Shown: positions 17,634 to 64,000 of the stretch, piece after piece
How positions within the stretch are numbered: the stretch's first letter is position 1
How the letters are laid out: every line of letters starts with the position of its first letter
Assembly (NCBI GenBank): GCA_004764695.1
Contig: SMSO01000033.1
Span: 2,837,526-2,901,525 of the forward strand
Reading direction: 5' to 3'
Source of the DNA: Schizochytrium sp. TIO01
Taxonomy: Eukaryota; Protista; Bigyra: Labyrinthulomycetes
Length of the DNA stretch: 64,000 bases
Translations under genes and position numbers: made by a program
The notes under the pieces: model-generated
The model's database searches: none
The model's input: the letters and a program-made list of their open reading frames with translations, nothing else
Told to the model about the DNA's origin: nothing

Positions 17634-20600
17634 TTATTTTTGAGCATCTCCTCTGATGAGGAAGTGAATCATATCATGCAGTTCCTTGACTTTATCTTGG
17701 GTATCACCATCCGACATATCAACATACAGAGGATTCATTCCCCACGATGCGCCAAAGATGCCTATCCATTCTGACGTGCTCAAGAGAACTTTGTCAATCA
17801 CAACTGGGATCATAAGTTCCCGATATTTTCTCTTAACTAAGTACTCAAACTCGTAACGGCAATAGTCTTCCTGGACAGGTTTCGAGTTTACCTTCTCCAT
17901 GTATTCCCGTGTAACAAAGACAACGCCCACTTTGGAATCATCAATACCCTGAGTCATAATACGAGTAATGTCGCCATGCTGCATCTCGTTTCGATCGAGC
18001 CAGCACGATAAGCCATGATCTTGTTCTAATGCATCACTCACGCGACATACAAGGCTATGCACAGACATGTCTTTGCCCCACGCGTGTGATAAGAAAACAT
18101 CATATTTTTCCTTGCGTTGCAATGCTGACCTTAAGTTCATCTTCTCCGCATCGTCTCTGCTTGCGAAAAAAAGGGAGAAACATTCGAAGGGCAACAGCCT
18201 ACGGGCTCTAGAAAGGACTACGCATTTTTTTGGTTTGGCCAAAACACTGATAGAGGCGCAGCTCTTATCCTCCATAGTACCATCGCAGCTGAGAAACAAC
18301 TTCGGATTCAGATTTTGTTTCATGAAAGCTTTATCAATCAACTGTAGTTGAGATTGCAATAGCTCCACACAACTCACCAATCTTCTCTTTTCCGAGGTAT
18401 CATCCTCGTCCGTTAAGAAGCGGAAGATAATGCGACATTTAGATGTATCTGCAAAAAGAAATACATATATTCCATCAAAGATTATGCTTGCCACATTTGC
18501 ATACACCTGTGCAACCTCAACAAGCCCTTCTGGAAACTCTGAAACCATACTTGCAACCAAGCGTTGAAACACTCCGCCAGGGAAAAAGTCCAACTCAATA
18601 TACATTAAATCGGCGCCTTCAAATTGCAATTCCAGATCATCGCGCTCATCCTCAGAAATAGGCGCCAACAAACTGGGAACTAGCAAAGCACCCTCTGTAT
18701 CCAAGTCTCCAATCCATGGGCTTCTGCTTGCGAGAAGCATCTCTGTCATGAGTACAGAAAAGTAGCCAACTAAGAGTGGCTGACCCCAGAGTTTTGACAA
18801 CAACAACTGGCTCACCACACCACGTTTCTCCCATGTATCTAGGTCCCCGAACCAATCTGTTGGTATATCAGCCTCTATAGCCACTTCTTTCATTTTTTGC
18901 ACATGCTTTTGCATATGCATTGGATCACAAACAACTCGTGACAAGTTGTCCAGCAGCCATTGAGGTTGCAGAATCACATATTTTGCCAGAGTGGGCGTAG
19001 AGGTGAGATGCACAATTACACCTAGCTCGTGCATGAGCTCCAACATATCCATGGTCTCATCTCTTGAAATACCACAGGAACTTGTTGCAAGCTCATACAC
19101 AGCATCAAGCTCAAAGTAGTCTCTGTTGGTTGCAAACATACGATCTAAACAGAGAGACCATCGTAGTGGCACCTCCTCTTTTACATAAGGCTGTGAGGCT
19201 GCAGTCGTCGTGAGAAGCTTGCGAAGAAGCTCGCGGCGCGATGGGTCACTTCTTTCGGTGTTGTCCAGAGGGTGAAAGTGCAAACCCTCTGTTTTGTTTG
19301 TTACAAGGAAAAGGCCTTTGACCCCAGGCAAGAGCCCTTCCAACGCAGTGTTAACGAGCTTCAAATCTTCGATAGGATCACGCAGAGCATCAAGGTATGT
19401 TCCCACAAGAAGAAACGTGGCTCCATTCGCATGTAAGCGTATTGAGTCTAGCCAGAATCGAATCGTGTTCAGTGCCGTCTCTTTGTCCTCCATTAATGCA
19501 TAGTCAGAATAACCCTGGAAATTATGCTTTCCAATCACTTCTCGCATATCGAAAACGATGACATACACGCCAAACTTGGTTAAAAATAGGTGGTGCAAAG
19601 CGTAGAATACCTCCTGCCCTCCATAATCCCAAATGGAGAAACTGACATCCTCTTTAACTTTTTCGCTGCCCCTCTCTTCTAGTTCAAGCTTTACAGAAGC
19701 CTTGAAAGACTTAGCCACCTCATCAGTCTTAACCTTAAGCTCAGGTTTCAATCTTTTATCCGTCCGAGGCCCAGACAGTCTGGCCAGTGATTTACGTAAA
19801 CTTCGGCGAATACTCTTTCGCCCTCCAAGCACCTGTTGCTTCGCAAGAGCCTCACTGAGGTCCGCAGACTGATAGCCTCTGGGGTCCTCTTGCCAATCTG
19901 TTGTACGGATCAGCTTTAATTCTACACCAACAGTCGAGTGATGTTCCGGCACAAAAGACTGATTAAGTAACGTCCGAATAGTTGATGTCTTACCACCACC
20001 TCCCTTTCCAACCACCATAAGCTTTGCTCGCCCCCACCGAACCTTTTCATTTTTTGAGAACGCATTCATCGCAGAATTTACAAACTGATCCGCAATATTT
20101 TTTGCCAGCATCAACCGACTCCCAATTTGGTCTCGCACGGTTTGAGGGATATTATCATTTAGACTTTTGGAACTGTTAGTTTTTTTTTTTTAACAATTCT
20201 ATTCTCCTCTAGAAAAACTTAAAAACCTTCTTCTTCCGTTAGGGTTTTAAAGAGAAGATGAAACTTACAGGATATTACAAAGGACCTTATTTACGTCTAA
20301 CGCTCCAGCCACTGCCTTCGCACCCTCTGAGCCGATATCATTCCATTGAAGACTGTTGGATTGATTGAATAATGCATTCAACATACACAAGGATGTGAGC
20401 TATCTAATTGCGCGTATCATATATTTCTTCAAAGCAATGGTCGAGAATCAGAAACATTCTTTGCAAGCAAGTAAGAAAGCGTCGACCTACTCAAGTGATT
20501 TTAACGAGCGATTCTCTCTCAGTGCTGCAGCCATTGCCTGTGCTCCCTCGTCACCAAGTTTATTGTTTGGAAGGCTTTTGGGTTGATTGTACGAGCGAAA

Positions 20601-23600
20601 GGCCAAAAGCAATAAGCAATATATAAGAGCATAAAAACATTCATTCATGCATGGCCATCAGTCATTCAGCTCAGTTCTTAATGCTAACTTTCAAATTTAG
20701 AAATGTAACTGCAAACAAAGTATTTCAACAATGCTCACGCAAAACTATGAAACTGTGCAAGCCTTACAAGCAAACTTGATACAGTATTTCGCGTGTTAAA
20801 TAAACTTACTTGAGCAATGTCAGCGACTTGTTCTCTATCAGTGCCGCGGCCACTGCCTTCGCACCCTCTGAGCCTATTTCGTTGGCTCCAATGCTGTTTT
20901 ATTGGTTGCAATATGGGAAAAGTTAATAATTCAACATACATTCAAACACACAAAGTGTCAGTCATCTAGTGTAGCATGCACTCAAATGAAAAATTAGATA
21001 CTAAATGAAGATTCGCAAGAGCATTCATCCAATATATAACGTTTGGCCACGAGCTAGAACAACCTACTCAAGTGATGTCAGCTTTCGACTTTCTATCAGT
21101 ACCGCAGCCACTGCCTTGGCACCTACAACGCCGATGTTGTTGCCATTAAGACTGTTGATTTTAGTCAAATGTAGGCACGCATGTAACATGAAGACATATA
21201 GATGGCTGTTAGGCATGTAGCTAATATACTCTCACCCACCAAACTACCATTGTTTGGCCCATAAGAGGACCCCAGACAACCTACTCAAGAATCTCCAGCG
21301 AACTATTCTCGTTCAGTGCTGCAGCTACCACCTTGGCACCCTCAACGCCGATATTGTTGTCAGCAAGTCTAATGCATTAGAAAATAAATCCAAAATACCC
21401 ACGCGTCTATTAGTCATCTAGTTTAGATGGTTGTGCACTCATAAAAAATAATCTCAAATACACCTGATCAATGCAGTGTGCAACCAAGCTTTGTGAATTA
21501 AGTTCAAACAACCTACTTGAGTGATATCAAAGACTTATTCTCTATCAGCATCGTAGCCAACGCTTCTGCGCCCTTGTAATTGACATGGTTGTCTCCCAGA
21601 CTGGTGATGGATTAAAATCGATACCAAGAGTTGAACAGGAAGTACCCCAAACGCACAAAATGGTCAGTTGTTAAGCACAACTTATTAAAGCAGATGTCAA
21701 TATGCCAACAATCAACAATTGTAAATTTCACGCCCCCAAAATAGCGGGCGACCATCAAGCAGACGTTGCGTACAACGTGATAGATTAACTTACTCTATAA
21801 ATTTCAGCGAATTGTTTTTATTCAGCGCTGCACTCACTACTTTGACGCCTTCGTCACCAATTTTGTTTGATGAAAGACTGTTGATTGGAATTAATAATGG
21901 CAATAGATTTTTCAAAAGATTGTGCGTTCACAAATGTCCTCACTTCGGTGTCAGGCATCTAGTTTTGCGCCGCTGCATCCACACAAGCAAAATAATCATG
22001 AATAAGCCAAAACAAGCATGGAAAAAAGCCACGTATGCATAAGCTAAACCAACCTACAAAAGTGAAGCGAGTGACTGGTTTTCTTTCAGCATCGCTCCCA
22101 TTGCTTTAATTCCCTCTGAACCGAAAGTATTACCCTCAAGTCTATCAATCGGATCCAACATTTACAGAGTTCGGAAAATTGAAAAGCGCGTACACACGTG
22201 CATTCAAGATGCAGGTTAGCCCCCTGGATTTAGTATTTGCTACATCTACCCAGTCAAATAATTCACATAAAGGAAAGTACTCTGGTTAGAATGCAAAGAT
22301 TGCATATCAACCATGCCAGAGGTACATGTACAAAGTTTATTTACTTACTTGAGTGACGTTAGCGATCTGTTCTCTTGTAACGCCGCAGCCACAGCCATGA
22401 TGCCATCATCGCCAATTTTGTTGCTTCGAAGGCTAATGAATTGATTAAATAAGATTAGCAGTTGGAAGTTCATTTATTTGCCATGCAGGGACGTCAGTCA
22501 TTTTGCTTCATTCATGGTTATCCTTTCTATCCATGATCATAATTTATTAGCAGGTGGGCAGTATGAAGCTGGAACCACTTACTCAAGTGAATTCAGTGAA
22601 CAGTTGTGTTTCAACGCCTCGGCTACTGCGGCAGTGCCCTCATTAGCGATCTTGTTGCCTTGAAGTCTATCGGTAGGTTCAAGTGATCACAAGGTTTTAA
22701 AGTATATATATGTATAAACGTATGTCTGTCAGTAACCTAGCTTAGTTCTTGCCACGTATTTCATACACGTAAGAAATAAAGCACTGCAAAATATGTTAAA
22801 TCTAACAAGTAAGCCTCAAATAGAAGCATGTGCGCTATGAATAACTTACTTTAGCAACCTTAACGACCGGTTCTCTTTCAGTGCCGCGCCCACTGCTTTA
22901 GCACCCTCTATGCCGATTTTATTCCATTGAAGACTGTTTGTTTGGGTGAATGATGGCAATAATTGAAAACCAAGACGTGCACATACACACAGTCAGCTAT
23001 CTAGCTTAATAGTTGTGAAAAAAAATAATAATAACAAAATAATACATCAAAATAGTACAGAGAAGCAAGCCTGTTCTACGAGCATACGAGATAAAACAAC
23101 TTACTCAAGTGATGCTAGCGAAAAATTCTCTTTCAATGCTGCGGCCATTGCCTTGGCGCCTTCACAGCCGATTTTATTACCTCGCAGACTGCCAGTTCAA
23201 TTAAACAACAACAATAGTTAAAAGGAAGATATACGAAAATTTATACATTCATTTGGCTAGCATTAGTAATCTACTTTAATACTTCAATTGATTCATATGA
23301 ACGAGCAATCAAGCCAGCATGGCATATAAGTTCACGTTCTTATCAACTTACTTGAGTGATACCAGCGATTGGTTCTCTTGGAGCACCGCAGCCATGACTT
23401 TAGCGCCCTCCGGACGGATTCTATTGTTTTGAAGTCTAAATTGTTGAATTAATCATGGTAATAGGGGGGAAAATAGGCACACATGATACAGGTCACTCAT
23501 CTAGCTTAGTTTTTGGTTCATTCACTCGTTTATAGAACACCCCACATCAAGCAAATACATTAAATAAGATACAAGCAAGTCTGATATACAAATAGATGAG

Positions 23601-47289: not shown

Positions 47290-47722
47290 GGCCGTGAGCA
47301 GGTAGAGCATAGTGGGTGGTTCGCTTGGCCTTAGCAAAGATGCTGGGTTGACTACCTGCGCTTGTAGGTTGCTTCCGGTTCCTTCTGCTTTGCCTCCAAA
47401 CGAACGAAGCTGTGAGATGAGATCACATCAACCTTGGCTCTGCGAGACTTGGACGAGGCTCGAGCTCCTGCAAGCACCGCTGCTTTGGCAAGATGGGTCT
47501 CTGTCTCCGCCAGCGAGCACAGAGTTAAGTGAGAACCTTTGTTTCTCAATTATAGAAGGTGTTTTTTATGCCTCAGAAAGGTCTGTGAAACAAGTGAGGT
47601 CTTGTTGGAGAATCAGCTGTCCACCTGAAAGGAGGTCTGCCACCAAGCCTAAACCATGGCCTCTGGAGAAAGAAATCAATGCTGGGTCATAAGCCTGGTC
47701 ATTCTCACTATGCGGCTATTTT
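47290..47722 (+). ncRNA. Candidate structured RNA of unknown family
   Basis: GC-richer island in AT-rich DNA; pairable ends, adjacent 8- and 9-bp helices, several hairpins, followed by TTTT. Hand-folded only. Confidence 0.3.
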
Positions 47723-48945
47723 GCTCGTTGGTATGTTTTTGTAAAATTCGCCGCTGACTAGAGTAATGAACAATTATTCATAAACACGAGCGACTTCACG
47801 GGTCGCAAAAATATTCAAAGTGATCTGCACATTTTGGCCAGGACAATAGCATTGCGAGACTTTTTGAATAAAAGATTTTTTTAATATGGTTCCTCTACAG
47901 TGTAGAACCTTTTACGACATAAGCAATTACCGCGGTGACCATTGCAAATGTTAAAAGTGGCCATGAACTTCGCAGTGCATTTAATTGGTCCACATGTAGA
48001 TGCCATTTTCCCGTATTGTTGTTCGCACTGAGCTGTGCACGAAAAGCAGTCAACTGTACATTGGAATTATACTGTTGCAACAATAACAACGTTCTGTTGA
48101 ATTTTATGCTAGCTAAGTTATGGCTTTGGTTTATTGGTCTAATGAATATGTTCCTTGTAGTAGGTATCTGCCGAAGTACCAATCCTAACTTAGTTTAGGA
48201 AAAATGAAAAATAAAATGTCGTACATCACCAGATGGCCAAAGTTTCTCCTCTAAAAATCCAGATCAATTCAGGTCGCTGGAGAATTGAAATCAGAATTCC
48301 TGGTACCTGACTTTGTTTCGAAAAATAGTAAATTAAACACGGCTGTCTTCAGGGAAGCTACTAAAAATTTTATTTCCTCAAATCTGCTGCTGAAGGGTAT
48401 CTTTAATATATACGACTTTTGTGCTGTTGCCTAAAGCTTGTCACCCAGGCAAAGGGAGAAGAGAAAAAGTGCAGCCTCGGGCAAGCGAATGGAGTTTTAA
48501 ATAAACAATATATCTCGATTGATTGCGGCGACGAGAATGATATTTGAAAAGCAAGTACGACCTTTTCTGTGGAACCTCTATTTATTCTACCGAGATCTTA
48601 AATTTGTTCCTTTCATTTGTTTCTGCAAGCGTACTTTCCAGAGAATGCAGTTACTGACCATGGCTTTCCTAAGTAGATCACCGATTGATGCAAAGTAATT
48701 TCGATTCTTTATCTCTTTGTGCCTAACTTTTAATGCATTGCAAAAAATAGGATACATCAATTTTCAGATTCCCTATCAATTTTTTTAATTCGGGAATGTT
48801 GATAGTAAGCCAACGTCACCAGTACGTATGTCAAAAATGAACAGATTAACCCCGCTTTGTGTGGAGAACTGATATCATTGCTTAATTATTAGTGATTCAT
48901 ATCAAAGTACCAAAAATGAGTGGTTTGGGAAAAAATTGCAAAAAG

Positions 48946-49064
48946 AACATTCAACACCGGGGCTTCGCATGCAGTCCCCTATCATACTACTGACCCGGCC
49001 CTACGCGACTTTACTTCTCAGTGCGAATGAGATGAGGTGTTACCCGCGTGGTATGATCGAATGT
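48946..49064 (-). rRNA. 5S rRNA
   Basis: 119 nt, ACATTCGATCATACC...GGTCAGTAGTATGATAGGGGAC...GTTGAATGTT, paired ends, T5 terminator downstream. Confidence 0.95.
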
Positions 49065-49087
49065 GAACAGATAAGTCGAACTCTAGC

Positions 49088-49094
49088 ATTTATA
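49088..49094 (-). promoter_or_regulatory. TATAAAT box at -30..-24 of 5S
   Basis: Conserved position in all three 5S copies. Confidence 0.7.
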
Positions 49095-52000: not shown

Positions 52001-52328
52001 AATGAATTATCGCAGGAACCAAGAAAGTAAAACTAAGAAAGGATTCGTATCTAATAATAAAGTAAATATGCTCCTCAAACTGGAAAATAAAATTAAGAAA
52101 GCATATATATCATCAGTGAAATGTTAATGAATCATTACACTGTTCTAAATTATGTTTAGTTTATGTTAAGTTTTAGTACGTCCCCTCACCAAGAACCTTG
52201 CCAAAAAAAACATTATAAATTTTGATCCTGTTGGCAGACGTCGGTAATATCTGGAAGAGAGCAGTTGCTTTTTTGCATTCTAGTCAACGGCGCTTAAGCA
52301 AAAGATAATCATTTAAAATTCGATTAGT

Positions 52329-55300
52329 TTATTCCAATCTAAAGTTTGCGCCAACGATATCTGGTGTTAGCAAAGGTGACAATAACTCTCTCAGAACGAG
52401 TCGAAGATTTCTATCCTGAATTTGTGCATTCCAGTACTCACGCAGCCGTTCAGCGCGGAGCAACTGCCACGCCTCACGAACCTGCTGAAATGAATAAGGA
52501 AAAAATGGATCTTGCCCAAGCTTTTTCAAGCAAGTTCTCACATGATCATGACATGCATCTTCATCCTGAGAACTGTAGCCAAGACACCAAGCGCAGAAGT
52601 GATGACCACAAGTCTCATTACCACACTCTACAGCACAGCAGCCGTCAAAATCGTGTACATATGCCTTACAGTTCGGACAACATGTGCTCAAGATCTTCTC
52701 TTGAATATGAAGTAAATGAAGCCGTGCGTCGCGATTCTGTTCATCAGCACGTAAAACTTGTGCTATACGCCTTTGGATCTCCTTCTCCGCCCAAGCTGCT
52801 GCTTCATTTTCTGCCTTCATCTTCGCAATCAACAATAGGTGATTCAAAGCAGTTGGTGCAAGACGGGTGATTTCTTGACCTGATATTCTTCCACTACATT
52901 CAGGTTTCATGCATGCCATTGTTCCATCAGCATCCACTCTTACGTTAGCAAGTGGCCGTGCCGCCGCTTCTACAGAAGATTCGATACAGTCTCGGCAAAG
53001 AAAGTCTCCCTCCTCGCAGCTCGTGCCCTCGGAAAGCAGACGCTCCTCCATGCATACTAGACATATCTTGACAGGGATCTTAGGAGCTCCAAAAGCTTCA
53101 TGTTGGAGTGCTTGGCGAGCGGTTGGACGCTGGCCAGGGTCTGTTGCTGTAAGAGCATCGATAAGTTTCTGCATTGCAGCGGTTCGCTCAGTAGGATACA
53201 GCTCCTTTAAGCTGATGCCCACAGAGTACATGTCCATCGCTGTTTCAAACCTATCTACAGGCCCATTCTGCAACTCGGGGGCAACGTACCGTGGCGTTGC
53301 CTGAAGTGATGTGTAAGTTGCAGTGTAGTCCGCAACCTTGATGCCGTCAAAGTCGCCGATCAATGGTGTCCCGTTGCTTGTGAGGAAAATGTTTTCTGGT
53401 TTGATGTCACAATGCACAATGCCGTGGGTATGTAAATCCGCCACACCGATAAGCAGGCCCATAGCAAGTCGGTCGCGCGCTGCTTTGCCTTCGTTAGGGT
53501 GACTCTCAATCCACCTGGCAAGGTCACCTTGCTCGTAGAAAGGCATGACGATACAGCCACGCGGTTCTCCATTAGAGGTATCCACAAAAGCGCCAGTAAT
53601 ACGTATCACGTGCTGAGACACCACTTTGCCCATATTTGCAGCTTGCCTGTAAAATATTTTGTGTTGGCTCGAATGGCCGAGTTGAAATTGTTTCAAAACC
53701 ATAGTTTTACCAGCGTTGTCAAGAACCTTTTGTACTCTCTTGCCACCTCTGGAAGCAAGGGGCTCGCCAACAGGCTTGAAGTCCGAAACTGTGACATTCG
53801 TCAACCAAAGGTCAGAACATGCTACTTCAAAAACACCCTCTGCACTTACGTGAAGCCTTTCCAGCCAGGCGCTATCTTGCAGCAACTCTGGATAATGTTC
53901 CTGCGCGTGTTGCAGAGTCTCAGCAAGCTTATGACGAAAAGCTTTGCTAAGGTCGATAGGGTTGCCTTGAGAGAGAATGAGCTCTTGTTTTTTCATTCTA
54001 TTTCTAAAATATGTTCGCTCTTCCTCATCCAAGTCCTCTATTTCAAGTTCTTCTTTGGCTCTCTTCAAAATTTCTGTGGCTTTCCTCGACTTGTCAAGTT
54101 TCTGGAATAATGCTTCAACATCTGAGACAGAAGGTTCTTTCAAACCCAGTGCTGCAAAGTCATACAGATTAAAGAGATCTGTTGGTGTGCACTTGCTTGC
54201 ATCATTCAACACTGTGCTTGCAGAGTATCCTTCAAATCGAGCGAATGTTGAACTTATCGCGCAAAGTATTTCCCACAATTGGGTACGAAGTGTATCTCCT
54301 TGTAGATCTTCGATCTCTTGCTTGAGAGCACTCTCAAGTTCAGACAACTCTGGTTCTAGCTCCATGGCCTGCTCAGGTGTCCTCAGGGCAACCGATAATC
54401 CATCACCAAGTTCTAGCTCAGACAATCGAGAGATGACGCGCTTTACAGCTTGTTGGCTTCGTTCACCAATGTTGTTGTGTTGGCCTTCTCCACTCCTCTT
54501 GTACCCTTCCACGCATTGGACAGCCTGAATAACGAGTTCTTGGCAGTGTTTGAAGTCATCAGTGCTGGTTTCTTCATCGACGGGTGCAAGGTTGATCTTT
54601 AGATCGTTTACGAAACTTTCAAATCTCACTTTGAATTCTCGCACTGCACTCTCATCACTTTCGCAAAGGTTGGCGCGAACCCATGGGTACACAACCTGCA
54701 AAAGTGAATACAGGTGCCTCCGTTCGGTGTTCCGCTTTTCGATGAGGCTGGCAAAGCCATCAGCAGAGCTTGCACGAATCTGGCCTTGTAGCACGTCAAG
54801 ACTCTCTTTGGAGTTCTTGATGTCAGCGAAAACCTGTCGCAACTTCACTTGGCCAAAGTAGCCCTGGATCGCCGGTCGAACGAATTCCTCAAGCAGGGCA
54901 ATCCCAGTCAGCAGGGAATTTCCTCTGACCCCGCCTCGGTCCGCGCGCAAGTCCGAGACTTTCTTGGCAAGCTGCACCACATCAGCGAAACTCACGCTCG
55001 CTCCATCCGGCCGTTCTCTGAGGCGAACAAGAAGACGTAAGCAAACGAGCAAAATGATGTTAAGGCAGCAACAAAAGCAGACGCAAAAGTTAGGATACCC
55101 TCTATCTCAATAACACAATTCGTGGAATGAATCATTACACGATCCCAAACAAAGACTGACCGCATGAACTTACCCAGATCCATCCAAAGTAGCAAGCCCG
55201 GCGCCATCAATGCCGTCTTGTTCGTTCTTGGGCTCTGCAGAAGGCTCGCTTTCTGCAGCCTCTATGGAAGCAGAGGAATCGAGCTCTGACGAGAAATCTG

Positions 55301-58300
55301 CAATGTCCTCTCCAGGAGAACACACCCTTTCGAACAATTCTTTAGGAGTTCCAGAAAAATTGTCATAGCTGCATTTTGTAAATAAATGAACGAAAGAAAG
55401 AGAATAAAAGCGCTTGTTAGAAAACCGATGCACGCAACTAAAGACGGCCTTCTCACAAGTCCATATGGAGACATGGAGAGAACCAGCGAAGGCAAGGCTC
55501 TGCACATGCTGGGAATAGCAGCAGAGGGAACGGAACTTACGAGATTATAACAGAAGGACATGCTTTGTGCAGAGACTTTGCGACGGCCTTTGCGCCCTCA
55601 TCGCCAATGTTGTTATTGTCAAGACTGTGAGTATAAATGAATAAGTTTGTTTTGTTGATTCGTTGTCAGGAAAGACAGGTCCAGTCAGTTGATCCTGTTT
55701 TGTTTTGTTTTTCCTCACAATAAAAAGCAATCAGCTCTTCTTCTTCTGCTGCTGCTGCTGCCTATCAAATTATATAGATTTCCTTCTTCTCTTTGTAAAA
55801 AAGAAAAGACTTCTTTGCCTTTCTTTGCGTACCCAACTACGTAAACTACTTAGGTAGTCTACCAGCAGTACTACAAACACCAAGAACTAAAAAGAAAGAA
55901 AGAAAAAGCTTGGTCCTGACTATTACGATAGCTTTCCCTCGTGGATGATTCCACCAACGTACTACAATAGTTCAAGGTTCTTGCATCCCTCGAGTGCCTT
56001 TGCGACGGCCTTTGCGCCATCATCGCCAATGTTGTTGGTATGAAGACTGTGAGTATAAATGAATAAGTTTGTTTTGTTCATTCGTTGTCAGGAAAGACAG
56101 GTCCAGTCAGTTGATCCTGTTTTGTTTTGTTTTTCTTCACAATATAGCAATCAGCTCTTCTTCTTCTTCTGCTGCTGCTGCTGCTGCCTATCAAATTATA
56201 TAGATTTCCTTTTGCCCTTCCTTCTTCTCTTTGTAAAAAAGAAAAGACTTCTTTGCCTTTCTAAAGTACCTAACTACGTAAACTACTTAGGTAGTGTACC
56301 AGCGGTACTACAAACACCAAGCACTCAAAAGAAAGAAAGAAAAAGCTTGGTCCTGACTATTACGATAGCTTTCCCTCGTGGTTGATTCCACAAACGTACG
56401 ACAAAGTTTGAAGGTTCTTGCATCCCTCGAGTGCCTTTGCGACGGCCTTTGCGCCCTCCGAGCCAATGTTGTTGCCCCCAAAAAAACCCCCACCAAGACT
56501 GTGAGTATAAATGAATAAGTTTGTATTGTTCATTCGTTGTCAGGAGAGACAGGTCCAGTCAGTTGATCCTGTTTTGTTTTGTTTTTCCTCACAATAAACA
56601 GCAATCAGCTCTTCTTCTTCTTCTTCTGCTGCTGCTGCTGCTGCGTATCAAATTATATAGATTTCCTTCTGCTCTTTGTAAAAAAGAAAAGACTTCTTTG
56701 CCTTTCTTTGCGTACCCAACTACGTAAACTACTTAGGTAGTGTACCAGCAGTACTACACACACCAAGCACTAAAAAGAAAGAAAGAAAAAGCTTGGTCCT
56801 GACTATTACGATAGCTTTCCCTCGTGGTTGATTCCACAAACGTACTACAATTGTTGAAGGTTCTTGCATCCCTCGAGTGCCTTTGCGACGGCCTTTGCGC
56901 CCTCATCGCCAATGTTGTTGTCCTGAAGACTGTGAGTATAAATGAATAAGTTTGTTTTGTTCATTCGTTGTCAGGAAAGACAGGTCCAGTCAGTTGATCC
57001 TGTTTTGTTTTGTTTTTCCTCACAATAAAAAGCAATCACCTCTTCTTCTTCTTCTTCTGCTGCTGCTGCTGCTGCCTATCAAATTATATAGATTTCCTTT
57101 TGCCCTTCCTTCTTCTCTTTGTAAAAAAGAAAAGACTTCTTTGCCTTTCTAAAGTACCTAACTACGTAAACTACTTAGGTAGTGTACCAGCGGTACTACA
57201 AACACCAAGCACTCAAAAGAAAGAAAGAAAAAGCTTGGTCCTGACTATTACGATAGCTTTCCCTCGTGGTTGATTCCACAAACGTACGACAAAGTTTGAA
57301 GGTTCTTGCATCCCTCGAGTGCCTTTGCGACGGCCTTTGCGCCCTCCGAGCCAATGTTGTTGCCCCCAAAAAAACCCCCACCAAGACTGTGAGTATAAAT
57401 GAATAAGTTTGTATTGTTCATTCGTTGTCAGGAGAGACAGGTCCAGTCAGTTGATCCTGTTTTGTTTTGTTTTTCCTCACAATAAACAGCAATCAGCTCT
57501 TCTTCTTCTTCTTCTGCTGCTGCTGCTGCTGCGTATCAAATTATATAGATTTCCTTCTGCTCTTTGTAAAAAAGAAAAGACTTCTTTGCCTTTCTTTGCG
57601 TACCCAACTACGTAAACTACTTAGGTAGTGTACCAGCAGTACTACACACACCAAGCACTAAAAAGAAAGAAAGAAAAAGCTTGGTCCTGACTATTACGAT
57701 AGCTTTCCCTCGTGGTTGATTCCACAAACGTACTGTAAAGTTTGAAGGTTCTTGCATCCCTCGAGTGCCTTTGCGACGGCCTTTGCGCCCTCCGAGCCAA
57801 TGTTGTTGTCCTGAAGACTGTGAGTATAAATGAATAAGTTTGTTTTGTTGATTCGTTGTCAGGAAAGACAGGTCCAGTCAGTTGATCCTGTTTTGTTTTG
57901 TTTTTCCTCACAATAAAAAGCAATCAGCTCTTCTTCTTCTGCTGCTGCTGCTGCCTATCAAATTATATAGATTTCCTTCTTCTCTTTGTAAAAAAGAAAA
58001 GACTTCTTTGCCTTTCTTTGCGTACCCAACTACGTAAACTACTTAGGTAGTCTACCAGCAGTACTACAAACACCAAGCACTAAAAAGAAAGAAAGAAAAA
58101 GCTTGGTCCTGACTATTACGATAGCTTTCCCTCGTGGATGATTCCACAAACGTACTTTAAAGTTTGAAGGTTCTTGCATCCCTCGAGTGCCTTTGCGACG
58201 GCCTTTGCGCCCTCCGAGCCAATTTCTCCAAAAGAACTTCTGTTTCGAAGGCTGTGTTTGTTTGTTTGTTTATTTGTTGGTGAACAAGTGAGAGTAAGTA

Positions 58301-58460
58301 TATGACTAGTTCAAAACTATTCTTCTTCTACAAAGCTGACTACTACAACACATCGACGACGCGATGCTTCCTTCTTCTGTCTCCTCCCTTCTGCATCGTG
58401 AACTTACTCTATCTCCGTCGTATCTTCTGTGATGCCCTTAATGCTTTTTGCCACAGTCAT
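52329..58460 (-). CDS. Gene C: 7 LRR - helical region - atypical protein kinase - RING - Rcat/IBR-type zinc domain (10 exons, ~1188 aa)
   Basis: Exons 58460-58408, 58251-58156, 57817-57734, 57386-57288, 56929-56846, 56498-56400, 56046-55963, 55624-55541, 55368-55174, 55017-52329; all junctions are phase 2 and the frame stays open. Kinase: VLK, HCDIKPEN, IGDFDG, YVAPE, DMYSVG. RING: CLVC...C...LCRDC...CMKPEC. Then CPNC...DFDGCCAVEC...CGHHFCAWC. Confidence 0.88.
55541..58230 (-). repeat. Tandem array of intron+exon units (period 422-446 bp) in gene C
   Basis: Six near-identical introns containing (CTT)n(CTG)n, each abutting an LRR exon with the shared core GAKAVAK (ALEGCKNL in six of the seven). 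Confidence 0.97.
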
Positions 58461-59691
58461 CTTGTTTTGCAGCAGTGAGTGTCACCTTTAATGGATGGAT
58501 TGATCAATCGCGTTGATTGGCTTTGCTTTTCTTTGTCTTCGCTTTGCTTTGGCGCTCGAAAGAGAGAGAGAGAGAGAGAGTAGTTTGAGTCTTCGCTCGC
58601 GCTGCTGATCAGGAACGGAGACTCCTGCTCTGTCTTCTTCTTCTCTTTCTTCTTCGCAGCAAGGAAGGAGGAACGGGCGGACTACTCGCGATGCCTCGAA
58701 AGTGCCTCTGCAGACCAAGCCTCGCCCACGAGCAACGAACGCGTGGAGGGGTGTGGCGCGCGAGAGGTTGCGGGGGCGTGGGTATCGTGCGTGCGCGCTG
58801 CCTCGTGTTGCGGGTTTGCGAGGATGGCTGGCTTTGGCGAGAGTAGTAGGTTGCTGGGTATGATAGTTGGTTGTATACGTAGTAAGCGCTGCTAGTGTTT
58901 TCGAAGGTCCGTTGAGTCAATTTTTTCCTGAGAGCGCAAGGTGTGAAAATAGATTCTGCTCTTGAAGAAAGACGAGGAGGCGTTGTGCTTCTATCAAGTC
59001 ACACACAATGCAGAACGTGGTAGAAAGGTCCCTATCCATTTGTGATCGTGTATGGGTGCTATTGTTTTGGTTTGATAATATATAGCATTGAGTAGGGTTT
59101 GGTTGGTCGAGTTTCGATTGGCACGGCGTTTTGTGTAACGAGTAGTAGGCAAGAAGAGGTCCTTGTATCGGGGTCAATTTGACAGAAGAGCCAAAAACTT
59201 GTAGTCTTTTCGTTGTTTTTGGTGAGGTCTTGAAGCGACGAAAACTCGTAACTGTGTCATACAAGAAATAAATTGCTTGTCGGGAGTAGGTTTTTGTCTA
59301 TCAGATAGTAATAGGTTTGTGATGCGATCTATGATAGATTATCTTGAGATCGGGAAAGCTTGGGAGAGAATGGAGAGCAAGTCGACAATTTTCGGATTTC
59401 AAAGATGTGTTGAGTTGCTTCACGGCTTCAACATGAAGAAAGCGGAGAGGCGCTTTCAAGGATCGGAGCTACTGGCGGCTGCGACCAAAGGTGTACCAGA
59501 AAGAAGGGAAGGAAATTTAAAAAAAGAGGAGAATCTTTGACCGAGAGTAGATGCCTAGTTGCCTTTCTTACAGTGCTGTCAATCCTCTTCGGGCAGGTTT
59601 ATTTTCATGAAATTAATCTTTAATAATATTGTGATATCAACCGTGGAGTTGCTTTCTTTTAGTAATAGGGTTAAAAATAAAAGGAGAAAAA

Positions 59692-59810
59692 CACATTCAA
59701 CACCGGGGCTTCGCATGCGGTCCCCTATCATACTACTGACCCGGCCCTACGCGACTTTACTTCTCAGTGCGAATGAGATGAGGTGTTACCCGCGTGGTAT
59801 GATCGAATGT
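59692..59810 (-). rRNA. 5S rRNA
   Basis: 119 nt, nearly identical to 48946-49064; T5 terminator follows. Confidence 0.95.
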
Positions 59811-59833
59811 GCTGAGGAGAGGGTGCATGATGG

Positions 59834-59840
59834 ATTTATA
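59834..59840 (-). promoter_or_regulatory. TATAAAT box at -30..-24 of 5S
   Basis: Conserved position in all three 5S copies. Confidence 0.7.
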
Positions 59841-60016
59841 CTCAGTATTAGGTTGGTTGTTGTTTACTTCTATGTAGTGCAACAAGACAAGATAGTGGTA
59901 GTGGAACGTCTGGAGCAAACATCACTGCAAAAGATATTAGAGTAGAAGTTATTAACTAGTTTGGTAAAGATAGGCCTAGTAGATATTGTTAGAAAGAACT
60001 CAAGTGCAGAAAAAGA

Positions 60017-63000
60017 ATGCAGAACCCAAGTGTCGCTGCAGAGATTGATCAAATCACTATTTACGACGGAACAGCAGGTGTGGCGCAGCAGAGAGCTGGG
60101 AGCATAAACAACATCAGCAGCGACGAGCAACACGATTGCGAGTCGGCGACCCTTTTCTTCGCGAGCGTTGGCTTAGCAAGGATTGGCAAGAGACAAAGCT
60201 CGAACGAACGATCGGCGAGGGAGGGCGCTCTTGAAGTGCAGTATACACAGGGAGCTTCTACTACACGCTGATCGTGTAGCGTAGAAACGGGTGGCGGGAG
60301 ACTAAGTGGTGTTTTCTTAGGTTCTTCTCGGAGTCAACTGTTGAAAGTACCGTCGCCAGGCACGAACGAGGGACGAAAATGATTAGAGAAAACATGATTT
60401 CAGATCACTCTTGTGACTTCTTTGGCGAAATGAACAAGCGGACGCTTCGAAAGCTTCGTGAAGGTTCAGTTACCAAAAATATAGAGTAAGTGTAAAAGTA
60501 AGAGAAGATCTTTGGACACAGAAACACCAGACCAAGAATATCTAGCCAGTTAGTAAAAATTTGACTTCCCCGACTTGCGTGTTGATCTGCCGTGCGTGCT
60601 TTATTCATGTGCTGGATACAGATTTGAAAGGGTTGCTGACTTTGAACTTGTTGATGATGCAAAATCTCTTTTTTTAATATAATAGACTAAGTGGGTACCA
60701 TTGGGCACGAGTTCAAATTAGCAACGAAGGTTGGCAAGCCTTGACTGAGGCAGTCAAGGAAAATCGTGTGGGATGAACCTTGAAGTGAGTTTTCGTTAAA
60801 GGTTCCGTATTCGCGCGGCATTGTAGACGATCATTAAATTAATGACTGACGGAAGCTGTTCTTTCTCGGTGTTTCGGGGGAAATTCTCGATGAATAGACT
60901 CAAGAACATTAATATTAGCAATGATCATTGGGTTGCTCTCGCAAACGCACTGAAGGAGACTACAGTAATGTCTGGACTCATGTAAGTGAGAATTAACATT
61001 TCGTGTGTTGAGGCAATGGATCTGATGACACCATTTCATGTTTAATTATATATACACTAACATGAATAATTACCCGTCGAGGCACACAATACCATTCTTT
61101 GATGGTGGCTAACAAGCAGCTTGTGTAACGTCCCATTCACCACTGAAATGATCAAGGGCTTGGATGGTGTTCTCCAGAAGAATCGAGCTTTGAAGCGTTT
61201 GGGGTGAGTTCAGCTAAGTCAAGGTGAAATGTCATCTAGGTCCCACCTGACAGGTTGTCATTTTTTTTGTTGACGAGCATGTCATTGGGGACGACTTTGT
61301 AGGATCATTATTTGAAAACTGCTAACAGTGAGATTATTTGGTGGTTACTATAATACTCCTTGTTATCAATGGGGGGTGCGCAGGCTTTTGGATAACAATT
61401 TGGGGAGTGAAGCTTTTGCGATTTTGGTGGAAGCCCTGAAGATGAATGAGACGCTGAAATGTTTGGAGTGAGTTTGTTGAAGCAGGAAGACACGATATCT
61501 GGTCTCTTTGTTGTTTGTTAAAGAGTTTTTTGGTAACAAAATGAGAACGACGACTGACGATGTTATAAATTGATGTGCTTTTACTTGTGAGCGAGCAGGA
61601 TTGAAAGGAATATCGGGGCTGACGATTGCGTCGTTTTAGCTGATAGTCTAAAGAACAACCAGTCACTGAGTACAGTAAAGTGAGTATAGTCGGCCTTTGC
61701 AATATTTGCTAGATGTTATGTCTTGTCGTGCATATAAGAGAGTTATATGATAGGTAGCTAACAAATTGTGCGATGCATTGGCATGATGGTCTCTTGAATG
61801 AACAGTCTTGATGACAATACGATTGGCAGCAAAGGTTGTTTGGCTTTGGCCGAGGTGCTCAAGGTAAACGAAACGCTGAGAATTCTACAGTAAGTATATA
61901 TAGTCTATGTATGCCGCCGGATACAGGAATGTTTCTGATAGTCGTGCAGGAAGTTTGCTGACGTTACTGTCGATTGATTAAACGATACTGTTGCATAATT
62001 TTTGACAAGCGGGGGCTTACAGAATTCGTGGTAACAACGTTGGCAGCAATGCTTGTGCAGTGTTGGCAGATACACTGAAGAAGAACAAGACGCTGGCAGA
62101 ATTGGGGTGAGTTGAACAAGACCTTGAAATAGATTCATGATAATGGTGAACATGTGGGGCACAAGGAGAGGTTTTGCCTTGATCTTTTTAAAATTATAAA
62201 TGCATGGTGAGAAATGTTTGAGCAAGGTGGCTGACGTTCAAACTTGAGTGAAATCACTTTTATTTTTTCATTGTCAATTGTGGACCAACAGGCTGGGGAA
62301 CAACAATATTGACAACAAAGGTTGTGCAGCGTTGGCGGATGCACTCAAGACAAACCATACGTTGACCATGCTAGAGTGAGTTGACTGTTATACCCTTTGC
62401 ATGCATGCAAAAAGAGGGATAGTCATATGACATACTGACAGGAAGCATTGGAATGATTACGATTCTGAAAACAATTTATTGTCTTTGGCGGAGTACGGAT
62501 GCGCAGCCTTACATCTAACAAAATCAACGATGAAGGATGGGTGGGCTTGGCGGAAGTACTGAAGGAGAACAAGACAGTGGAAACGTTGCTGTGAGTTAGA
62601 CTAGCAATTTATCAGGCTATTGCCGGTACGAGAAGTTACCCATTGTAGCTTCTTTAGCAAAGAAATGACTGACTTTGATATCAATTGACGCATTTTTCTT
62701 TTTCAACAGGATGAATGGAAGCATTGTTGGCGATAAAGGTTGTGCGACGTTTGCTGAGGTACTCCAGAAAAACCATTCGCTGAAAAACCTAGGGTGAGTT
62801 GAGCAATCTATGTGTCAGACGATTCTGAGAATACACGGGCCTTTGTTCAAATTCTTGGCTGTTTCGAGTGAATATTGAAAGTTTAGAAGCATAGAGTTGC
62901 ACTTAGAGTGGCTCCGTACTGATTGTGCAGGAAGACTATTTGTTAAGATAACTGACTTTGATGTATAAATGGAAACAAATGAAATGATTTGCTATTTCGT

Positions 63001-64000
63001 TTTTGACTAATAGTCTGGGTACAAAGTACTTTGATAACACAGGCTTTCGCGCTTTTATGGATGTACTCAAGGAAAACAAGGTTTTGAAAGCGCTATTGTG
63101 AGTTGAATGATTTTGTTTTTTTTTGGGGGGGGTCTCTGACTGATGCAGAAATGATCAGAGGATCGAAAGAAGTTGTGTAATTACGTGTTTAATTCAAGCA
63201 AGTAGAAGGGAGCGATGCTTGCTTTTTGAAACCATGAGGAAGCCATTGGTGACGCTGTCAGAGGACTAACATTGGGTTGGAACGGGTTATGCCACGCAAC
63301 AACGTTTTCATTTTATTGCTAACTGCAATCTAACAGCTTGAGCGCAATGAGCATTGACGACAAGTTTTGTGTGGCTTTGGGTGAGGTGTTGAAGAAAAAC
63401 AAGGTTCTGACAGCATTATCGTGAGTTAAACAAGCTATTTTGGGCACAAAAGTGGTAAGGGTCAAAATCATTGGTGTACACTACTGCGGTTGATAAATAT
63501 GGAACACTTGGAAGATATAAGAGGAAATCTGGCGATGTCCTTGAAAATTGCAGTTTGATAGCAGAGATCTAACTCTATTCATTATTTGTAAATCGTGTTA
63601 TAGTATCAATGGGAAGGACAAGAGCAGCACAAGAGGTCGTATGGTGGTTATTGAAGGACTTCAGGTGAACCGCAGTATCAGCAGTCTTTGAGTACGTTGA
63701 AGAAAAACATGAAGAAAAGGAATTGTTTGTCTAACAGAATGATGTATTGATTGATAGACACCCCTGGCGAGGTGATAAAAGCATCCAAAGTGAATAACCA
63801 GATTTATGCTGAACAGGAAAGGGAAGAAAAATCTTGAACAGGTAGCTCGTGAGCTTCGTTGCATCCATGCCGTGAACAGGACCCTAGCTATGGCCGCTTG
63901 CAGGGAAACGTGGCAAACAAGTTGCGCAGAGTAGTTTAACTAGCAACAAGACCAATCTAAGAGGTAAAGAGCAATGCCTTGATGAACAGAAGCTGGAAGT
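60017..64000 (+). pseudogene. Gene D: disrupted 12-LRR gene with 'RELRCIH' tail (paralogue of gene B); runs off the window, 5' exon uncertain
   Basis: LRR exons start at 60686, 61120, 61384, 61599, 61806, 62023, 62292, 62507, 62710, 63014, 63337, 63604 (mostly 84 nt, AG/GT). Last exon from 63738 aligns with the gene B tail. Lesions: TGA at 60774-60776 and 63748-63750, an extra base near 63688 and another near 63810-63832. Confidence 0.82.

What the first reader, a model, noticed from the sequence alone, without database searches (positions are those of the whole stretch)
17634..64000. Repeated head-to-head 'effector-LRR / 5S / LRR-only' receptor pairs: candidate paired immune-receptor system in a marine protist
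Seen: the same three-part layout occurs twice. Pair 1 is gene A (-, LRR-Roc-COR-TIR), a 5S copy (-), then gene B (+, LRR + RELRCIH tail). Pair 2 is gene C (-, LRR-kinase-RING-Rcat), a 5S (-), then gene D (+, LRR + the same tail). Starts are about 1.6 kb apart in both pairs (gene D start uncertain). The two 5S flanks share an identical 20-mer, ACATCACTGCAAAAGATATT (25611-25630 and 59919-59938), which I do not see beside the unpaired 5S at 49 kb. Established: plant NLR sensor/executor pairs such as RRS1/RPS4 are divergently transcribed, and TIR, ROCO, kinase and RBR domains are immune or death-signalling modules. Inference: a duplicated module in which an LRR-only partner (sensor, decoy or inhibitor) is co-regulated with an LRR protein carrying an interchangeable effector. 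I do not know of this arrangement being described.
Basis: partly seen in the sequence, partly recalled or inferred. Interest (0 to 1): 0.92.

Follow-up and report, generated by a model that had tools for sequence, protein, structure and literature searches.

The report
Head-to-head LRR genes flanking 5S
In this thraustochytrid-like protist a short 5S rRNA unit sits between two divergently transcribed leucine-rich-repeat genes at about 34 chromosome-end loci, but this looks like a duplicated, recombining gene block, and nothing yet shows that the two genes work as an immune-receptor pair.

Summary
Both three-part layouts, the three 5S genes, the shared 20-mer and the shared tail motif are at the stated coordinates. 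Gene A is transcribed and spliced exactly at its 84-nt LRR exons.

A census by match positions of the whole genome splits the claim.
- The kinase-type gene / 5S / tail-gene layout (pair 2) is a common module. 34 of 50 scored kinase-type genes face a tail gene head-to-head. A 30-mer beside the 5S marks 40 loci, 34 of them complete pairs.
- The Roc-COR-TIR / 5S / tail layout (pair 1) is unique: 1 of 17 such genes.
- 46 of 98 tail exons have no such partner within 25 kb.
- Left and right flanks re-assort around a conserved 5S unit of about 370 bp. The 20-mer is the outer end of that unit.

The LRR arrays of genes B and C match the published "LORE-TEARS" spacers of Aurantiochytrium limacinum subtelomeres in unit size and position.

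Best reading: a subtelomeric gene block spread by duplication and by recombination at the 5S unit. Functional sensor/executor pairing remains possible (about 0.2) but untested. The one complex prediction gave no verdict.

This scan had already noted head-to-head LRR pairs with a 5S between them on other DNA of this genome (s1-835704, s1-831125).

The parts
17634..20163 (-). Gene A last exon, encoding Roc GTPase, COR-A and a TIR domain
   Evidence: ORF 17634-20138. Pfam Roc 1.9e-17, COR-A 1.1e-10, TIR_2 1.1e-12. Splice joint 20163|20269 in 4 runs.
20269..23971 (-). Gene A LRR region: 15 exons of exactly 84 nt, one ribonuclease-inhibitor-type LRR each, with diverged introns
   Evidence: Exon scan. 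Joints with CT..AC ends at 20352|20491, 20574|20810, 22666|22850, 22933|23105, 23188|23352, 23435|23614, 23697|23888, and spliced contigs joining 21285-21368/21517-21600/21794-21877.
24280..24491 (-). Gene A exon 1 (ATG 24344-24342; N-terminus MSNQ...ALEQLRQGATTLK)
   Evidence: Joint 23971|24280. RNA contigs end at 24491, with an adapter as loose end in X19. Sequence read.
25368..25481 (-). Degenerate 5S rRNA copy between genes A and B
   Evidence: Rfam RF00001 at 59.6 bits. 89% identity to the canonical copy, with a 5-nt deletion.
25311..25340 (+). Effector-side 30-mer beside the 5S (2 mismatches here); genome-wide it marks the head-to-head module
   Evidence: Pattern search: 40 loci, controls 0. 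38 have an effector gene on this side and 34 have both genes.
25611..25630 (+). The 20-mer: outer end of the conserved region upstream of the 5S
25973..26091 (+). Gene B exon 1. It holds a 54-nt internal tandem duplication, so there is a second in-frame ATG at 26027. Its end is an inverted copy of the end of gene A exon 1.
   Evidence: Sequence. TRF 25969-26072. Inverted repeat 24273-24317 / 26054-26098, 80% complementary. RNA contig cover in X15 and X19.
26598..32861 (+). Gene B LRR array: 17 exons of 84 nt inside homogenised exon-plus-intron units of about 402 bp
   Evidence: Matches LORE-TEARS group 0 in unit size and position.
33146..33466 (+). Gene B tail exon (106 aa): two long helices joined by a disordered linker, holding the RELRCIH motif
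   Evidence: 99 matches in the genome. AlphaFold model with H2-46 and H72-104. No Pfam hit.
48946..49064 (-). 'Solo' canonical 5S about 3.3 kb 3' of gene C; itself a recurrent part of the block
   Evidence: Eight 5S copies on contigs C3-C13 lie 3.3-6.3 kb 3' of a kinase-type gene.
52329..55052 (-). Gene C last exon: helical region, protein kinase, and a Cys-rich RBR-like C-terminus
   Evidence: Pfam Pkinase 1.7e-29. RING/IBR only at E 3-4. Foldseek top hits are RNF216, HOIL-1L, ARIH1 and parkin, best E 3e-3. At least 50 copies in the genome.
55541..58250 (-). Gene C LRR array: about 6-7 exon-plus-intron units of 422-446 bp
   Evidence: Matches LORE-TEARS group 5 in unit size and position.
58408..58460 (-). 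Gene C exon 1, coding part (ATG 58460-58458)
   Evidence: Sequence read. Inferred from frame and GT donor, not from RNA.
59629..59658 (+). Effector-side 30-mer beside the 5S (exact match)
59692..59810 (-). 5S rRNA gene between genes C and D
   Evidence: Rfam 91.9 bits.
59919..59938 (+). The 20-mer, second copy
60379..60485 (+). Gene D exon 1 (inferred; a second in-frame ATG at 60394)
   Evidence: Sequence. Inverted repeat with the end of gene C exon 1, 58402-58425 / 60468-60491.
60690..63690 (+). Gene D LRR exons (diverged; at least 7 of exactly 84 nt)
63815..64000 (+). Gene D tail exon. Its frame is broken by extra G bases at 63821 and 63892 (and at 63681 in the exon before). The intact paralogue's tail would run past the window end.

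Best explanation
The two 'pairs' are instances of a mosaic, subtelomere-type gene block. A conserved 5S rRNA unit of about 370 bp lies between two divergently transcribed members of one large, lineage-specific gene family. The unit is made of the 5S, about 150 nt upstream that includes a TATA-like box and the 20-mer, and about 90 nt downstream that includes a 30-mer. In the flanking family every 84-nt exon encodes one LRR.

On the side the 5S points towards lies an LRR gene ending in a large effector exon. This is nearly always kinase plus an RBR-like domain. Here, once, it is Roc-COR-TIR. On the other side lies an LRR gene ending in a helical tail of about 105 aa.

The block spreads among chromosome ends by segmental duplication. 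It is re-assorted by homologous recombination whose junction is the near-identical 5S unit, and this automatically keeps the head-to-head orientation. The two genes are separate Pol II units, with a Pol III gene between them.

Shown: anatomy, copy numbers, orientations, flank re-assortment, and splicing of gene A. Inferred: the family members are pathogen-sensing receptors, recombination at the 5S is the shuffling mechanism, and the neighbours act independently.
For: - The 20-mer occurs 24 times in the genome, almost always 100-250 nt upstream of a 5S.
- Maps of all 24 loci: 12 are kinase-type / 5S / D-type tail. 3 have a left LRR gene with a B-type gene on the right. 5 have a tail gene with no left LRR gene. 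3 have a Roc-COR-TIR gene on the right. 1 has a Roc-COR-TIR gene in tandem upstream.
- Census of 5' neighbours: 34 of 50 kinase-type genes face a divergent tail gene and none has a tandem tail gene. Only 1 of 17 Roc-COR-TIR genes does so. 46 of 98 tail exons have no such partner within 25 kb.
- Partners of the kinase type are of all three tail subtypes: 15 B1, 14 D and 5 B2.
- The 30-mer marks 40 loci: 38 with an effector gene (37 kinase-type, 1 Roc-COR-TIR), 36 with a right-hand gene, 34 with both.
- Flank identity matrices show mosaicism around the 5S. L017 shares its left flank with L001-L003 but its right flank with L011 and L018. L018 has that same right flank with an unrelated left flank. 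L019 has a D-type right flank, and its left flank resembles that of L020.
- The window's pair 2 is identical over 9072 columns to a copy on contig C24, apart from 3 bases. Gene C has a copy on C35 that is 100% identical as protein.
- Unit sizes and positions of the arrays match the LORE-TEARS groups 0 and 5 described at A. limacinum chromosome ends. The genome has TTAGG telomeres.
- The gene A 5' end is about 870 nt from the 5S, and RNA contigs do not cover the spacer.
Against: - The layout persists through considerable divergence: kinase-type exons are 79-100% identical and tail subtypes only about 40% identical. 14 of 18 D-type tails are paired. Selection for pairing could also explain this.
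- The census rests on match positions only. The kinase search scored 50 of 328 candidates and the 5S search 40 of 144, so the fractions are lower bounds.
- Only 22 loci could be fetched as sequence.
- No expression data were obtained for genes C and D.
Confidence: 0.6

Rival explanations
1. A true paired receptor system. The tail-type LRR protein acts as sensor, decoy or inhibitor, and the adjacent LRR-kinase-RBR-like protein (or LRR-Roc-COR-TIR protein) acts as executor. The two are co-regulated from the shared spacer and bind each other, perhaps through the helical tail.
For: - There are 34 complete head-to-head pairs, and no tail gene lies in tandem 5' of a kinase-type gene.
- 14 of 18 D-type tails are paired.
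- The tail is predicted as two long helices, a shape typical of oligomerisation modules.
- The effector domains are of kinds used in immune or death signalling: TIR, Roc-COR, kinase, and weakly an RBR-like region (their roles are from established knowledge).
- Gene A is expressed, and a B-type exon 1 appears in 2 of 4 RNA-like runs.
Against: - 46 of 98 tail exons and 16 of 50 kinase-type genes are unpaired.
- Tail exons stay open at loci with no left partner: L007, L012, L016, L020.
- Partners re-assort.
- Orientation is preserved by recombination at the 5S without any selection.
- The spacer is 1.6-1.9 kb and holds a Pol III gene, so it is not a compact bidirectional promoter.
- The LRRs of C and D are no more alike than those of any two family members (46% nt).
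- The window's gene D has a broken frame while gene C is intact.
Confidence: 0.2
2. The 5S unit is kept between the genes because it works as a chromatin element. As a Pol III/TFIIIC-bound barrier or nucleolar tether, it would insulate or position subtelomeric receptor genes. It might, for example, limit the spread of silencing from the rDNA and telomere, or govern which copies are expressed.
For: - About 37 of 45 5S copies on contigs C3-C13 sit in a fixed position and orientation next to family genes.
- The 5S copies are 100% identical while the flanking genes diverge.
- Conserved non-5S blocks flank the gene on both sides.
- Pol III genes act as barriers and cluster at the nucleolus in yeast (established knowledge, not tested here).
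Against: - In pair 1 the 5S has decayed, yet gene A is still expressed.
- The identity of the 5S copies is expected anyway from selection on the rRNA and from concerted evolution.
- There are no chromatin or Pol III occupancy data.
Confidence: 0.12
3. Assembly artefact or dead DNA. The layouts would be mis-joined repeats or pseudogene debris with no expressed genes.
For: - The region is highly repetitive.
- The window's gene D differs from its twin only by three single-G insertions, which could be long-read errors or decay.
- The rDNA is internal to a long contig here, unlike the published typical chromosome end.
Against: - 14 DNA-type runs from several studies hold 81-95% of the words of 17634-26095.
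- Gene A is precisely spliced in four RNA-like runs.
- Nearly all the large effector exons and tail exons are open across dozens of copies.
Confidence: 0.03

Closest known systems
[quoted passage not shown]
   Same: The unit sizes and positions match. Group 0 has about 9 units of 385 bp between a 5S and the 18S gene, with the 5S pointing away from the rDNA. Group 5 has about 5 units of 421 bp between two consecutive 5S genes. TTAGG telomeres also match.
   Different: [quoted passage not shown] Here the units are exon-plus-intron cassettes of LRR genes that have proper first exons and large last exons. I cannot prove that the genome is the same strain. This assembly holds many more 5S copies (about 144 candidates), and some clusters are internal to long contigs.
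Ectocarpus LRR-ROCO and NB-ARC-TPR candidate receptors with one repeat per exon (PMC3341825; PMC11378527)
   Same: Both are stramenopiles. An LRR array precedes Roc-COR, each LRR is its own exon in a frame-preserving phase, and the genes are clustered with rapid birth and death.
   Different: Here the LRRs are of ribonuclease-inhibitor type with 84-nt exons. The effector exons include TIR and kinase plus an RBR-like domain. The family is subtelomeric and interleaved with 5S and rDNA genes. No head-to-head arrangement is mentioned in that paper's text (0 occurrences).
Plant head-to-head NLR pairs such as RRS1/RPS4, RGA4/RGA5 and Pik-1/Pik-2 (own knowledge)
   Same: Divergent orientation of two repeat-containing receptor-like genes, one with and one without an obvious signalling domain.
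   Different: There is no NB-ARC domain in either partner and no integrated decoy. The spacer is 1.6-1.9 kb with a Pol III gene in it. Partners are often missing and re-assort. No genetic or physical coupling has been shown.
Subtelomeric contingency gene families spread by ectopic recombination, such as Plasmodium var and yeast subtelomeric families (own knowledge)
   Same: Multi-copy, variable genes at chromosome ends, with mosaic flanks and near-identical recent copies on different chromosomes.
   Different: Here the recombination junction appears to be an rRNA gene unit, and the genes are intracellular-type LRR proteins built from exon cassettes.
5S rRNA genes linked to other multicopy genes, such as spliced-leader RNA, histone or rDNA repeats in various eukaryotes (own knowledge)
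   Same: 5S copies are dispersed as part of a larger repeated unit.
   Different: The linked partners here are Pol II genes that code for proteins of a receptor-like family, one on each side and in fixed orientation.

Membership tests
Plant-type paired NLRs (sensor/helper) | Both partners are NLRs with an NB-ARC (STAND) nucleotide-binding domain | tested here: not met
   Pfam finds Roc, COR-A and TIR_2 in gene A, Pkinase in gene C, and nothing in the tails. No NB-ARC.
Plant-type paired NLRs (sensor/helper) | Head-to-head orientation with a short shared promoter region | tested here: inconclusive
   The genes are head-to-head. The ATGs are 1.63 and 1.92 kb apart with a 5S gene between them. The gene A 5' end is about 870 nt from the 5S, and no RNA contig covers the spacer.
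Plant-type paired NLRs (sensor/helper) | One partner carries an integrated decoy domain | tested here: not met
   The tail has no Pfam match and only 5 relatives among 1.84 billion representatives. It is predicted as two helices.
Plant-type paired NLRs (sensor/helper) | Physical or genetic interdependence of the partners | not testable with these tools
   The complex prediction for gene C residues 1-430 with a D-type tail gave no verdict. This needs co-IP or genetics.
ROCO proteins | Roc GTPase directly followed by a COR domain | tested here: met
   Gene A: Roc 1.9e-17 and COR-A 1.1e-10, both above the Pfam cut-offs.
TIR-domain proteins | TIR fold recognised by a profile | tested here: met
   TIR_2 at 48.9 bits against a cut-off of 28, residues 681-795 of the gene A last exon. 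Catalytic residues were not examined.
RBR (RING-between-RING) E3 ligases | RING1, IBR and RING2/Rcat zinc modules with a catalytic cysteine | tested here: inconclusive
   Pfam IBR_2 E 3.1 and zf-C3HC4_4 E 4.3. PDB sequence hits E 0.04 or weaker. Model pLDDT 70, with the top Foldseek hits RNF216, HOIL-1L, ARIH1/2 and parkin, best E 3e-3. Cysteines are invariant in 5 homologues.
One-LRR-per-exon receptor genes (Ectocarpus LRR-ROCO type) | Each LRR is a separate exon of constant length in a frame-preserving phase, and is really spliced | tested here: met
   There are 15 (A), 17 (B), at least 4 (C) and at least 7 (D) exons of exactly 84 nt, all in the same phase. Splice joints for gene A appear in 4 runs. 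Splicing of B, C and D was not tested here.
5S rRNA | Rfam RF00001 above the gathering score over the full length | tested here: met
   96.5, 91.9 and 59.6 bits against a cut-off of 38. The 59.6-bit copy has a 5-nt deletion and is probably not functional (inference).
LORE-TEARS groups 0 and 5 | Tandem units of about 385 bp between the 5S and 18S genes, and of about 421 bp between two 5S genes | tested here: met
   402/379-bp units x 15.7 at 26910-32873, between the 5S at 25368 and the 18S at 35506. 422-446-bp units x 6.1 at 55576-58238, between the 5S at 48946 and the 5S at 59692.

The most novel reading that the evidence does not exclude
The LRR-kinase-RBR-like proteins and the adjacent LRR-plus-helical-tail proteins are obligate sensor/executor partners. 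Recombination at the invariant 5S unit between them deliberately shuffles left and right partners among about 50 chromosome ends. That would give a combinatorial, subtelomeric repertoire of receptor pairs in a unicellular stramenopile that carries persistent mirusviruses.
Probability: 0.12. Interest if true: 0.85.

Novelty: new variant of a known kind. Interest (0 to 1): 0.6.

Why it matters
The repeats published as non-coding spacers at thraustochytrid chromosome ends would in fact be a large family of expressed, exon-cassette LRR genes. Their arrangement around 5S genes has a simple rule, and about 34 loci follow it.

That gives a concrete system for three questions. How does a protist diversify candidate immune receptors? 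Can an rRNA gene serve as the junction for shuffling neighbouring genes? Did head-to-head receptor pairs arise outside plants?

It also matters for annotation. Gene finders and repeat maskers will miss these genes.

Tried and rejected
- Complex prediction for gene C residues 1-430 with the intact D-type tail of L005 scored 0.00 and gave no verdict. It is no evidence either way.
- Pfam found nothing on either tail.
- A HMMER search of 1.84 billion representatives with the tail found only 5 hits. These were same-lineage fragments and low-complexity proteins.
- A metagenome scan with the tail alignment found no relative.
- The search for homologous proteins on the gene C C-terminus gave only 4 hits, none with an IBR annotation.
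I could therefore not test whether the arrangement exists on contigs of other strains or species.
Control 5S loci without the 20-mer, and the sequences of all 34 pairs, could not be fetched. The census for those rests on match positions only.
- No fold search was run on the tail model. Two helices with pLDDT 67 would give meaningless matches.
- I considered that the 20-mer is a promoter element specific to tail genes. I rejected this as unproven. It also lies upstream of Roc-COR-TIR genes in the right-hand position (L013-L015), and it is simply the outer end of the conserved 5S upstream block.
- Spliced protein models were not joined or searched.
Full report
WHAT IS IN THE WINDOW

Rfam finds a complete rDNA unit: 18S at 35506-37289, 5.8S, and 28S to 41015, all on the + strand. 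It also finds three 5S genes on the - strand, at 25368-25481 (59.6 bits), 48946-49064 (96.5 bits) and 59692-59810 (91.9 bits).

The two large open frames carry the stated domains. Frame 17634-20138 (-) has Roc, COR-A and TIR_2. Frame 52329-55052 (-) has Pkinase.

A scan for AG + 84 nt + GT with an open inner frame finds the LRR exons: 15 in gene A, 17 in gene B, at least 4 of exact length in gene C and at least 7 in gene D. All are in the same phase, and each encodes one ribonuclease-inhibitor-type LRR.

Tandem Repeats Finder sees gene B's array as 15.7 units of 402 bp (26910-32873) and gene C's as 6.1 units of 422-446 bp (55576-58238).

Both + strand genes end in an exon holding LEQxxRELRCIHxVN.

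GENE STARTS AND RNA

Four runs that look like RNA hold spliced contigs with GT..AG joints at nine gene A exon borders. The contigs stop at 24491, in one run with a sequencing adapter.

Gene A therefore runs from about 24491 down to 17634, with its ATG at 24344. Its 5' end lies about 870 nt from the 5S.

No contig covers 24700-24899, 25100-25299 or 25500-25899. The first exon of gene B (25973-26091) is covered in two of the four runs. These are assembled contigs, so they show presence and splicing, not expression levels.

The first exons of A and B end in the same peptide (…QL.QGATTLK versus …QLQKGATTLK) and form a 45-nt inverted repeat. Those of C and D do so more weakly.

ATG-to-ATG distances are 1.63 kb for A/B and 1.92 kb for C/D.

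CORRECTIONS TO THE OBSERVATION

- The pair-1 5S is 89% identical to the canonical copy and lacks 5 nt. It is probably a decaying copy.
- The RING-Rcat call for gene C is not significant in Pfam (E 3-4) or by sequence against the PDB. An AlphaFold model (pLDDT 70) has RBR ligases as all its best Foldseek hits, but the best E-value is 3e-3. I rate it RBR-like, unproven.
- The window's pair 2 is identical over 9072 aligned columns to a copy on contig C24, apart from three extra G bases at 63681, 63821 and 63892. These break the frame of the last two exons relative to intact paralogues, whose tail is about 105 aa and would run past base 64000. They may be long-read errors or recent decay.

The window is contig C32:2837526-2901525 of a 64-Mb assembly in 37 contigs.

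1. The 20-mer occurs 24 times (up to 1 mismatch; reversed control 0), nearly always 100-250 nt upstream of a 5S.

2. I fetched the other 22 loci at plus or minus 5 kb. I mapped 5S, LRR exons, tails and the two effector exons on them.
   - 12 of the 24 loci are kinase-type(-) / 5S(-) / D-type tail gene(+), like pair 2.
   - 3 have a left LRR gene with a B-type gene on the right. Pair 1 is one of them.
   - 5 have a tail gene but no left LRR gene within 5 kb.
   - 3 have a Roc-COR-TIR gene in the right-hand position and no left gene.
   - 1 has a Roc-COR-TIR gene in tandem upstream of a D-type gene, with a truncated 5S between.

3. Whole-genome searches give 99 tail exons: about 56 of type B1, 15 of B2 and 18 of D. 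They give at least 50 kinase-type last exons at 60-100% identity and about 17 close Roc-COR-TIR exons.

4. I looked from each gene towards its 5' side for the nearest family feature within 25 kb.
   - 34 of 50 kinase-type genes face a divergent tail gene. None has a tail gene in tandem.
   - Only 1 of 17 Roc-COR-TIR genes faces a tail gene, and that one is the window's own gene A.
   - 10 tail genes have a Roc-COR-TIR gene in tandem upstream.
   - 46 of 98 tail exons have no such partner.

5. On contigs C3-C13, where the 5S list looks complete, about 26 of 45 5S copies have a divergent tail gene 2-9 kb upstream. Three have a divergent Roc-COR-TIR gene. Eight are 'solo' copies 3.3-6.3 kb 3' of a kinase-type gene, exactly like the window's 5S at 48946.

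6. A 30-mer just downstream of the 5S, on the effector side, occurs at 40 loci (control 0). Of these, 38 have an effector gene on that side (37 kinase-type, 1 Roc-COR-TIR), 36 have a right-hand gene, and 34 have both.

The module is real for the kinase type. Pair 1 is a one-off variant of it.

WHY THIS IS NOT YET A PAIRED RECEPTOR SYSTEM

- The copies are not independent. They sit mostly near contig ends, in clusters, and some are identical.
- The flanks are mosaic.
  - The right-hand flanks fall into a D class and a B/A class.
  - The left-hand flanks fall into at least two classes plus several unique ones.
  - The classes combine freely. L017 has the left flank of L001-L003 but the right flank of L011 and L018. 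L018 has that right flank with an unrelated left side. L019 has a D-type right flank, and its left flank resembles that of L020.
- Kinase-type genes of similar identity pair with all three tail subtypes.
- The only stretch shared by all classes is the 5S unit itself. The simplest reading is homologous exchange at that unit, which preserves orientation without any selection.
- Tail exons remain open at loci without a partner.
- The LRRs of C and D are no more alike than those of any two family members. A and B are somewhat alike: 68% nt identity against 60% within A.
- The tail is predicted as two long helices with a disordered linker. That suits self- or hetero-association but proves nothing.
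- The single complex prediction gave no verdict.

CONTEXT IN THE LITERATURE

A telomere-to-telomere assembly of Aurantiochytrium limacinum (bioRxiv 10.1101/2023.06.15.545109) describes several matching features:
- subtelomeric rDNA transcribed towards the telomere;
- a 5S pointing away from it;
- 'LORE-TEARS' repeats, with group 0 (about 385 bp x 9) between the 5S and 18S genes and group 5 (about 421 bp x 5) between two consecutive 5S genes.

The paper says these repeats lack similarity to GenBank sequences and suggests that they act in chromosome-end maintenance.

Gene B's and gene C's arrays match them in unit size and position, and this genome has TTAGG telomeres at contig ends. I therefore take the organism to be this species or a close relative. 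That is an inference, because organism names were coded.

No paper in the searchable library holds the term LORE-TEARS apart from that preprint. None describes LRR receptor genes in Aurantiochytrium.

The closest described gene family is the Ectocarpus LRR-ROCO set, with one LRR per exon, clustering, and rapid birth and death (PMC3341825).

This scan had already noted that the spacers are LRR genes (s1-821853, s1-834077). It had also noted head-to-head LRR pairs with a 5S between them on other pieces of this genome (s1-835704, s1-831125).

VERDICT

A head-to-head kinase-type / 5S / tail-gene module exists in about 34 complete copies, and the 20-mer belongs to a conserved 5S unit.

The module is duplicated and its orientation is fixed. 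Co-regulation, interaction and an interchangeable effector are not shown, and block duplication with recombination at the 5S explains the pattern.

I give the block-and-recombination reading 0.6, functional pairing 0.2, a chromatin role for the 5S unit 0.12 and artefact 0.03.

LIMITS

- The kinase and 5S searches scored only part of their candidates.
- Spliced proteins were not joined. Exons were searched singly by reference.

Noticed in passing
window 26910-32873 and 55576-58238: The tandem arrays of about 402 bp and about 422-446 bp match the published LORE-TEARS groups 0 and 5 in unit size and position, but they consist of one 84-nt LRR exon plus one intron per unit. Those 'spacers' are therefore coding.
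   Followed up: partly
window 25969-26072: A 54-nt tandem duplication inside gene B exon 1 repeats the start codon and the N-terminal peptide (MSDH… / MSDQ…). This gives two in-frame ATGs at 25973 and 26027.
   Followed up: no
window 26102-26354 and 26788-26888: Perfect microsatellites (GCTT)63 and (TTGT)25 lie in the first two introns of gene B. They account for the longer distance to its first LRR exon compared with paralogues.
   Followed up: no
window 63681, 63821, 63892: Three single-G insertions are the only differences from the C24 copy (L005) over 9 kb. All three fall in the last 320 bp and all break the frame. They are either long-read errors or very recent decay of gene D.
   Followed up: partly
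window 24900-25082: RNA-like contigs of very high depth (up to about 1300) match only this segment of about 180 nt between gene A and the 5S, then run on into unlike sequence at 25079-25082. An abundant transcript from a paralogous locus shares this piece. Its nature is unknown.
   Followed up: no
window 48946-49064: The 'unpaired' 5S is itself a recurrent part of the block. Eight 5S copies on contigs C3-C13 lie 3.3-6.3 kb 3' of a kinase-type gene. This class lacks the 20-mer and the 30-mer and shares only a TATA-like box with the other class.
   Followed up: partly
window 41715-41829 and 43229-43303: Rfam calls two tRNAs just beyond the 28S gene. ARAGORN confirms only tRNA-Arg(ACG) at 43229-43303. 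The 115-nt match at 41715 may hold an intron.
   Followed up: no
G000:C35:2708734-2711451 and C35:2643441-2687842: Contig C35 holds a kinase-type exon 100% identical to gene C. It also holds a similar run of Roc-COR-TIR gene, tail gene, kinase-type gene and tail gene, which suggests a recent large duplication of this whole region.
   Followed up: no
G000:C30:62273-79575: This is the only locus where a kinase-type gene is head-to-head with a Roc-COR-TIR gene across the 30-mer-marked spacer. It is a second kind of exception to the rule.
   Followed up: no
L013, L014, L015 (G000:C7:38092-48091, C7:1022964-1032963, C8:58787-68786): Here the same 5S unit and a B-like right flank (80-85% identical) lead into LRR-Roc-COR-TIR genes instead of tail genes. 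The 3' effector exon has therefore been exchanged behind a common gene head.
   Followed up: partly
G000:C4:412544-412573 and C4:1184324-1184348: TTAGG telomere-type repeats occur inside a contig as well as at contig ends (C3 has them at both ends). They could be scaffold joins or interstitial telomere repeats.
   Followed up: no
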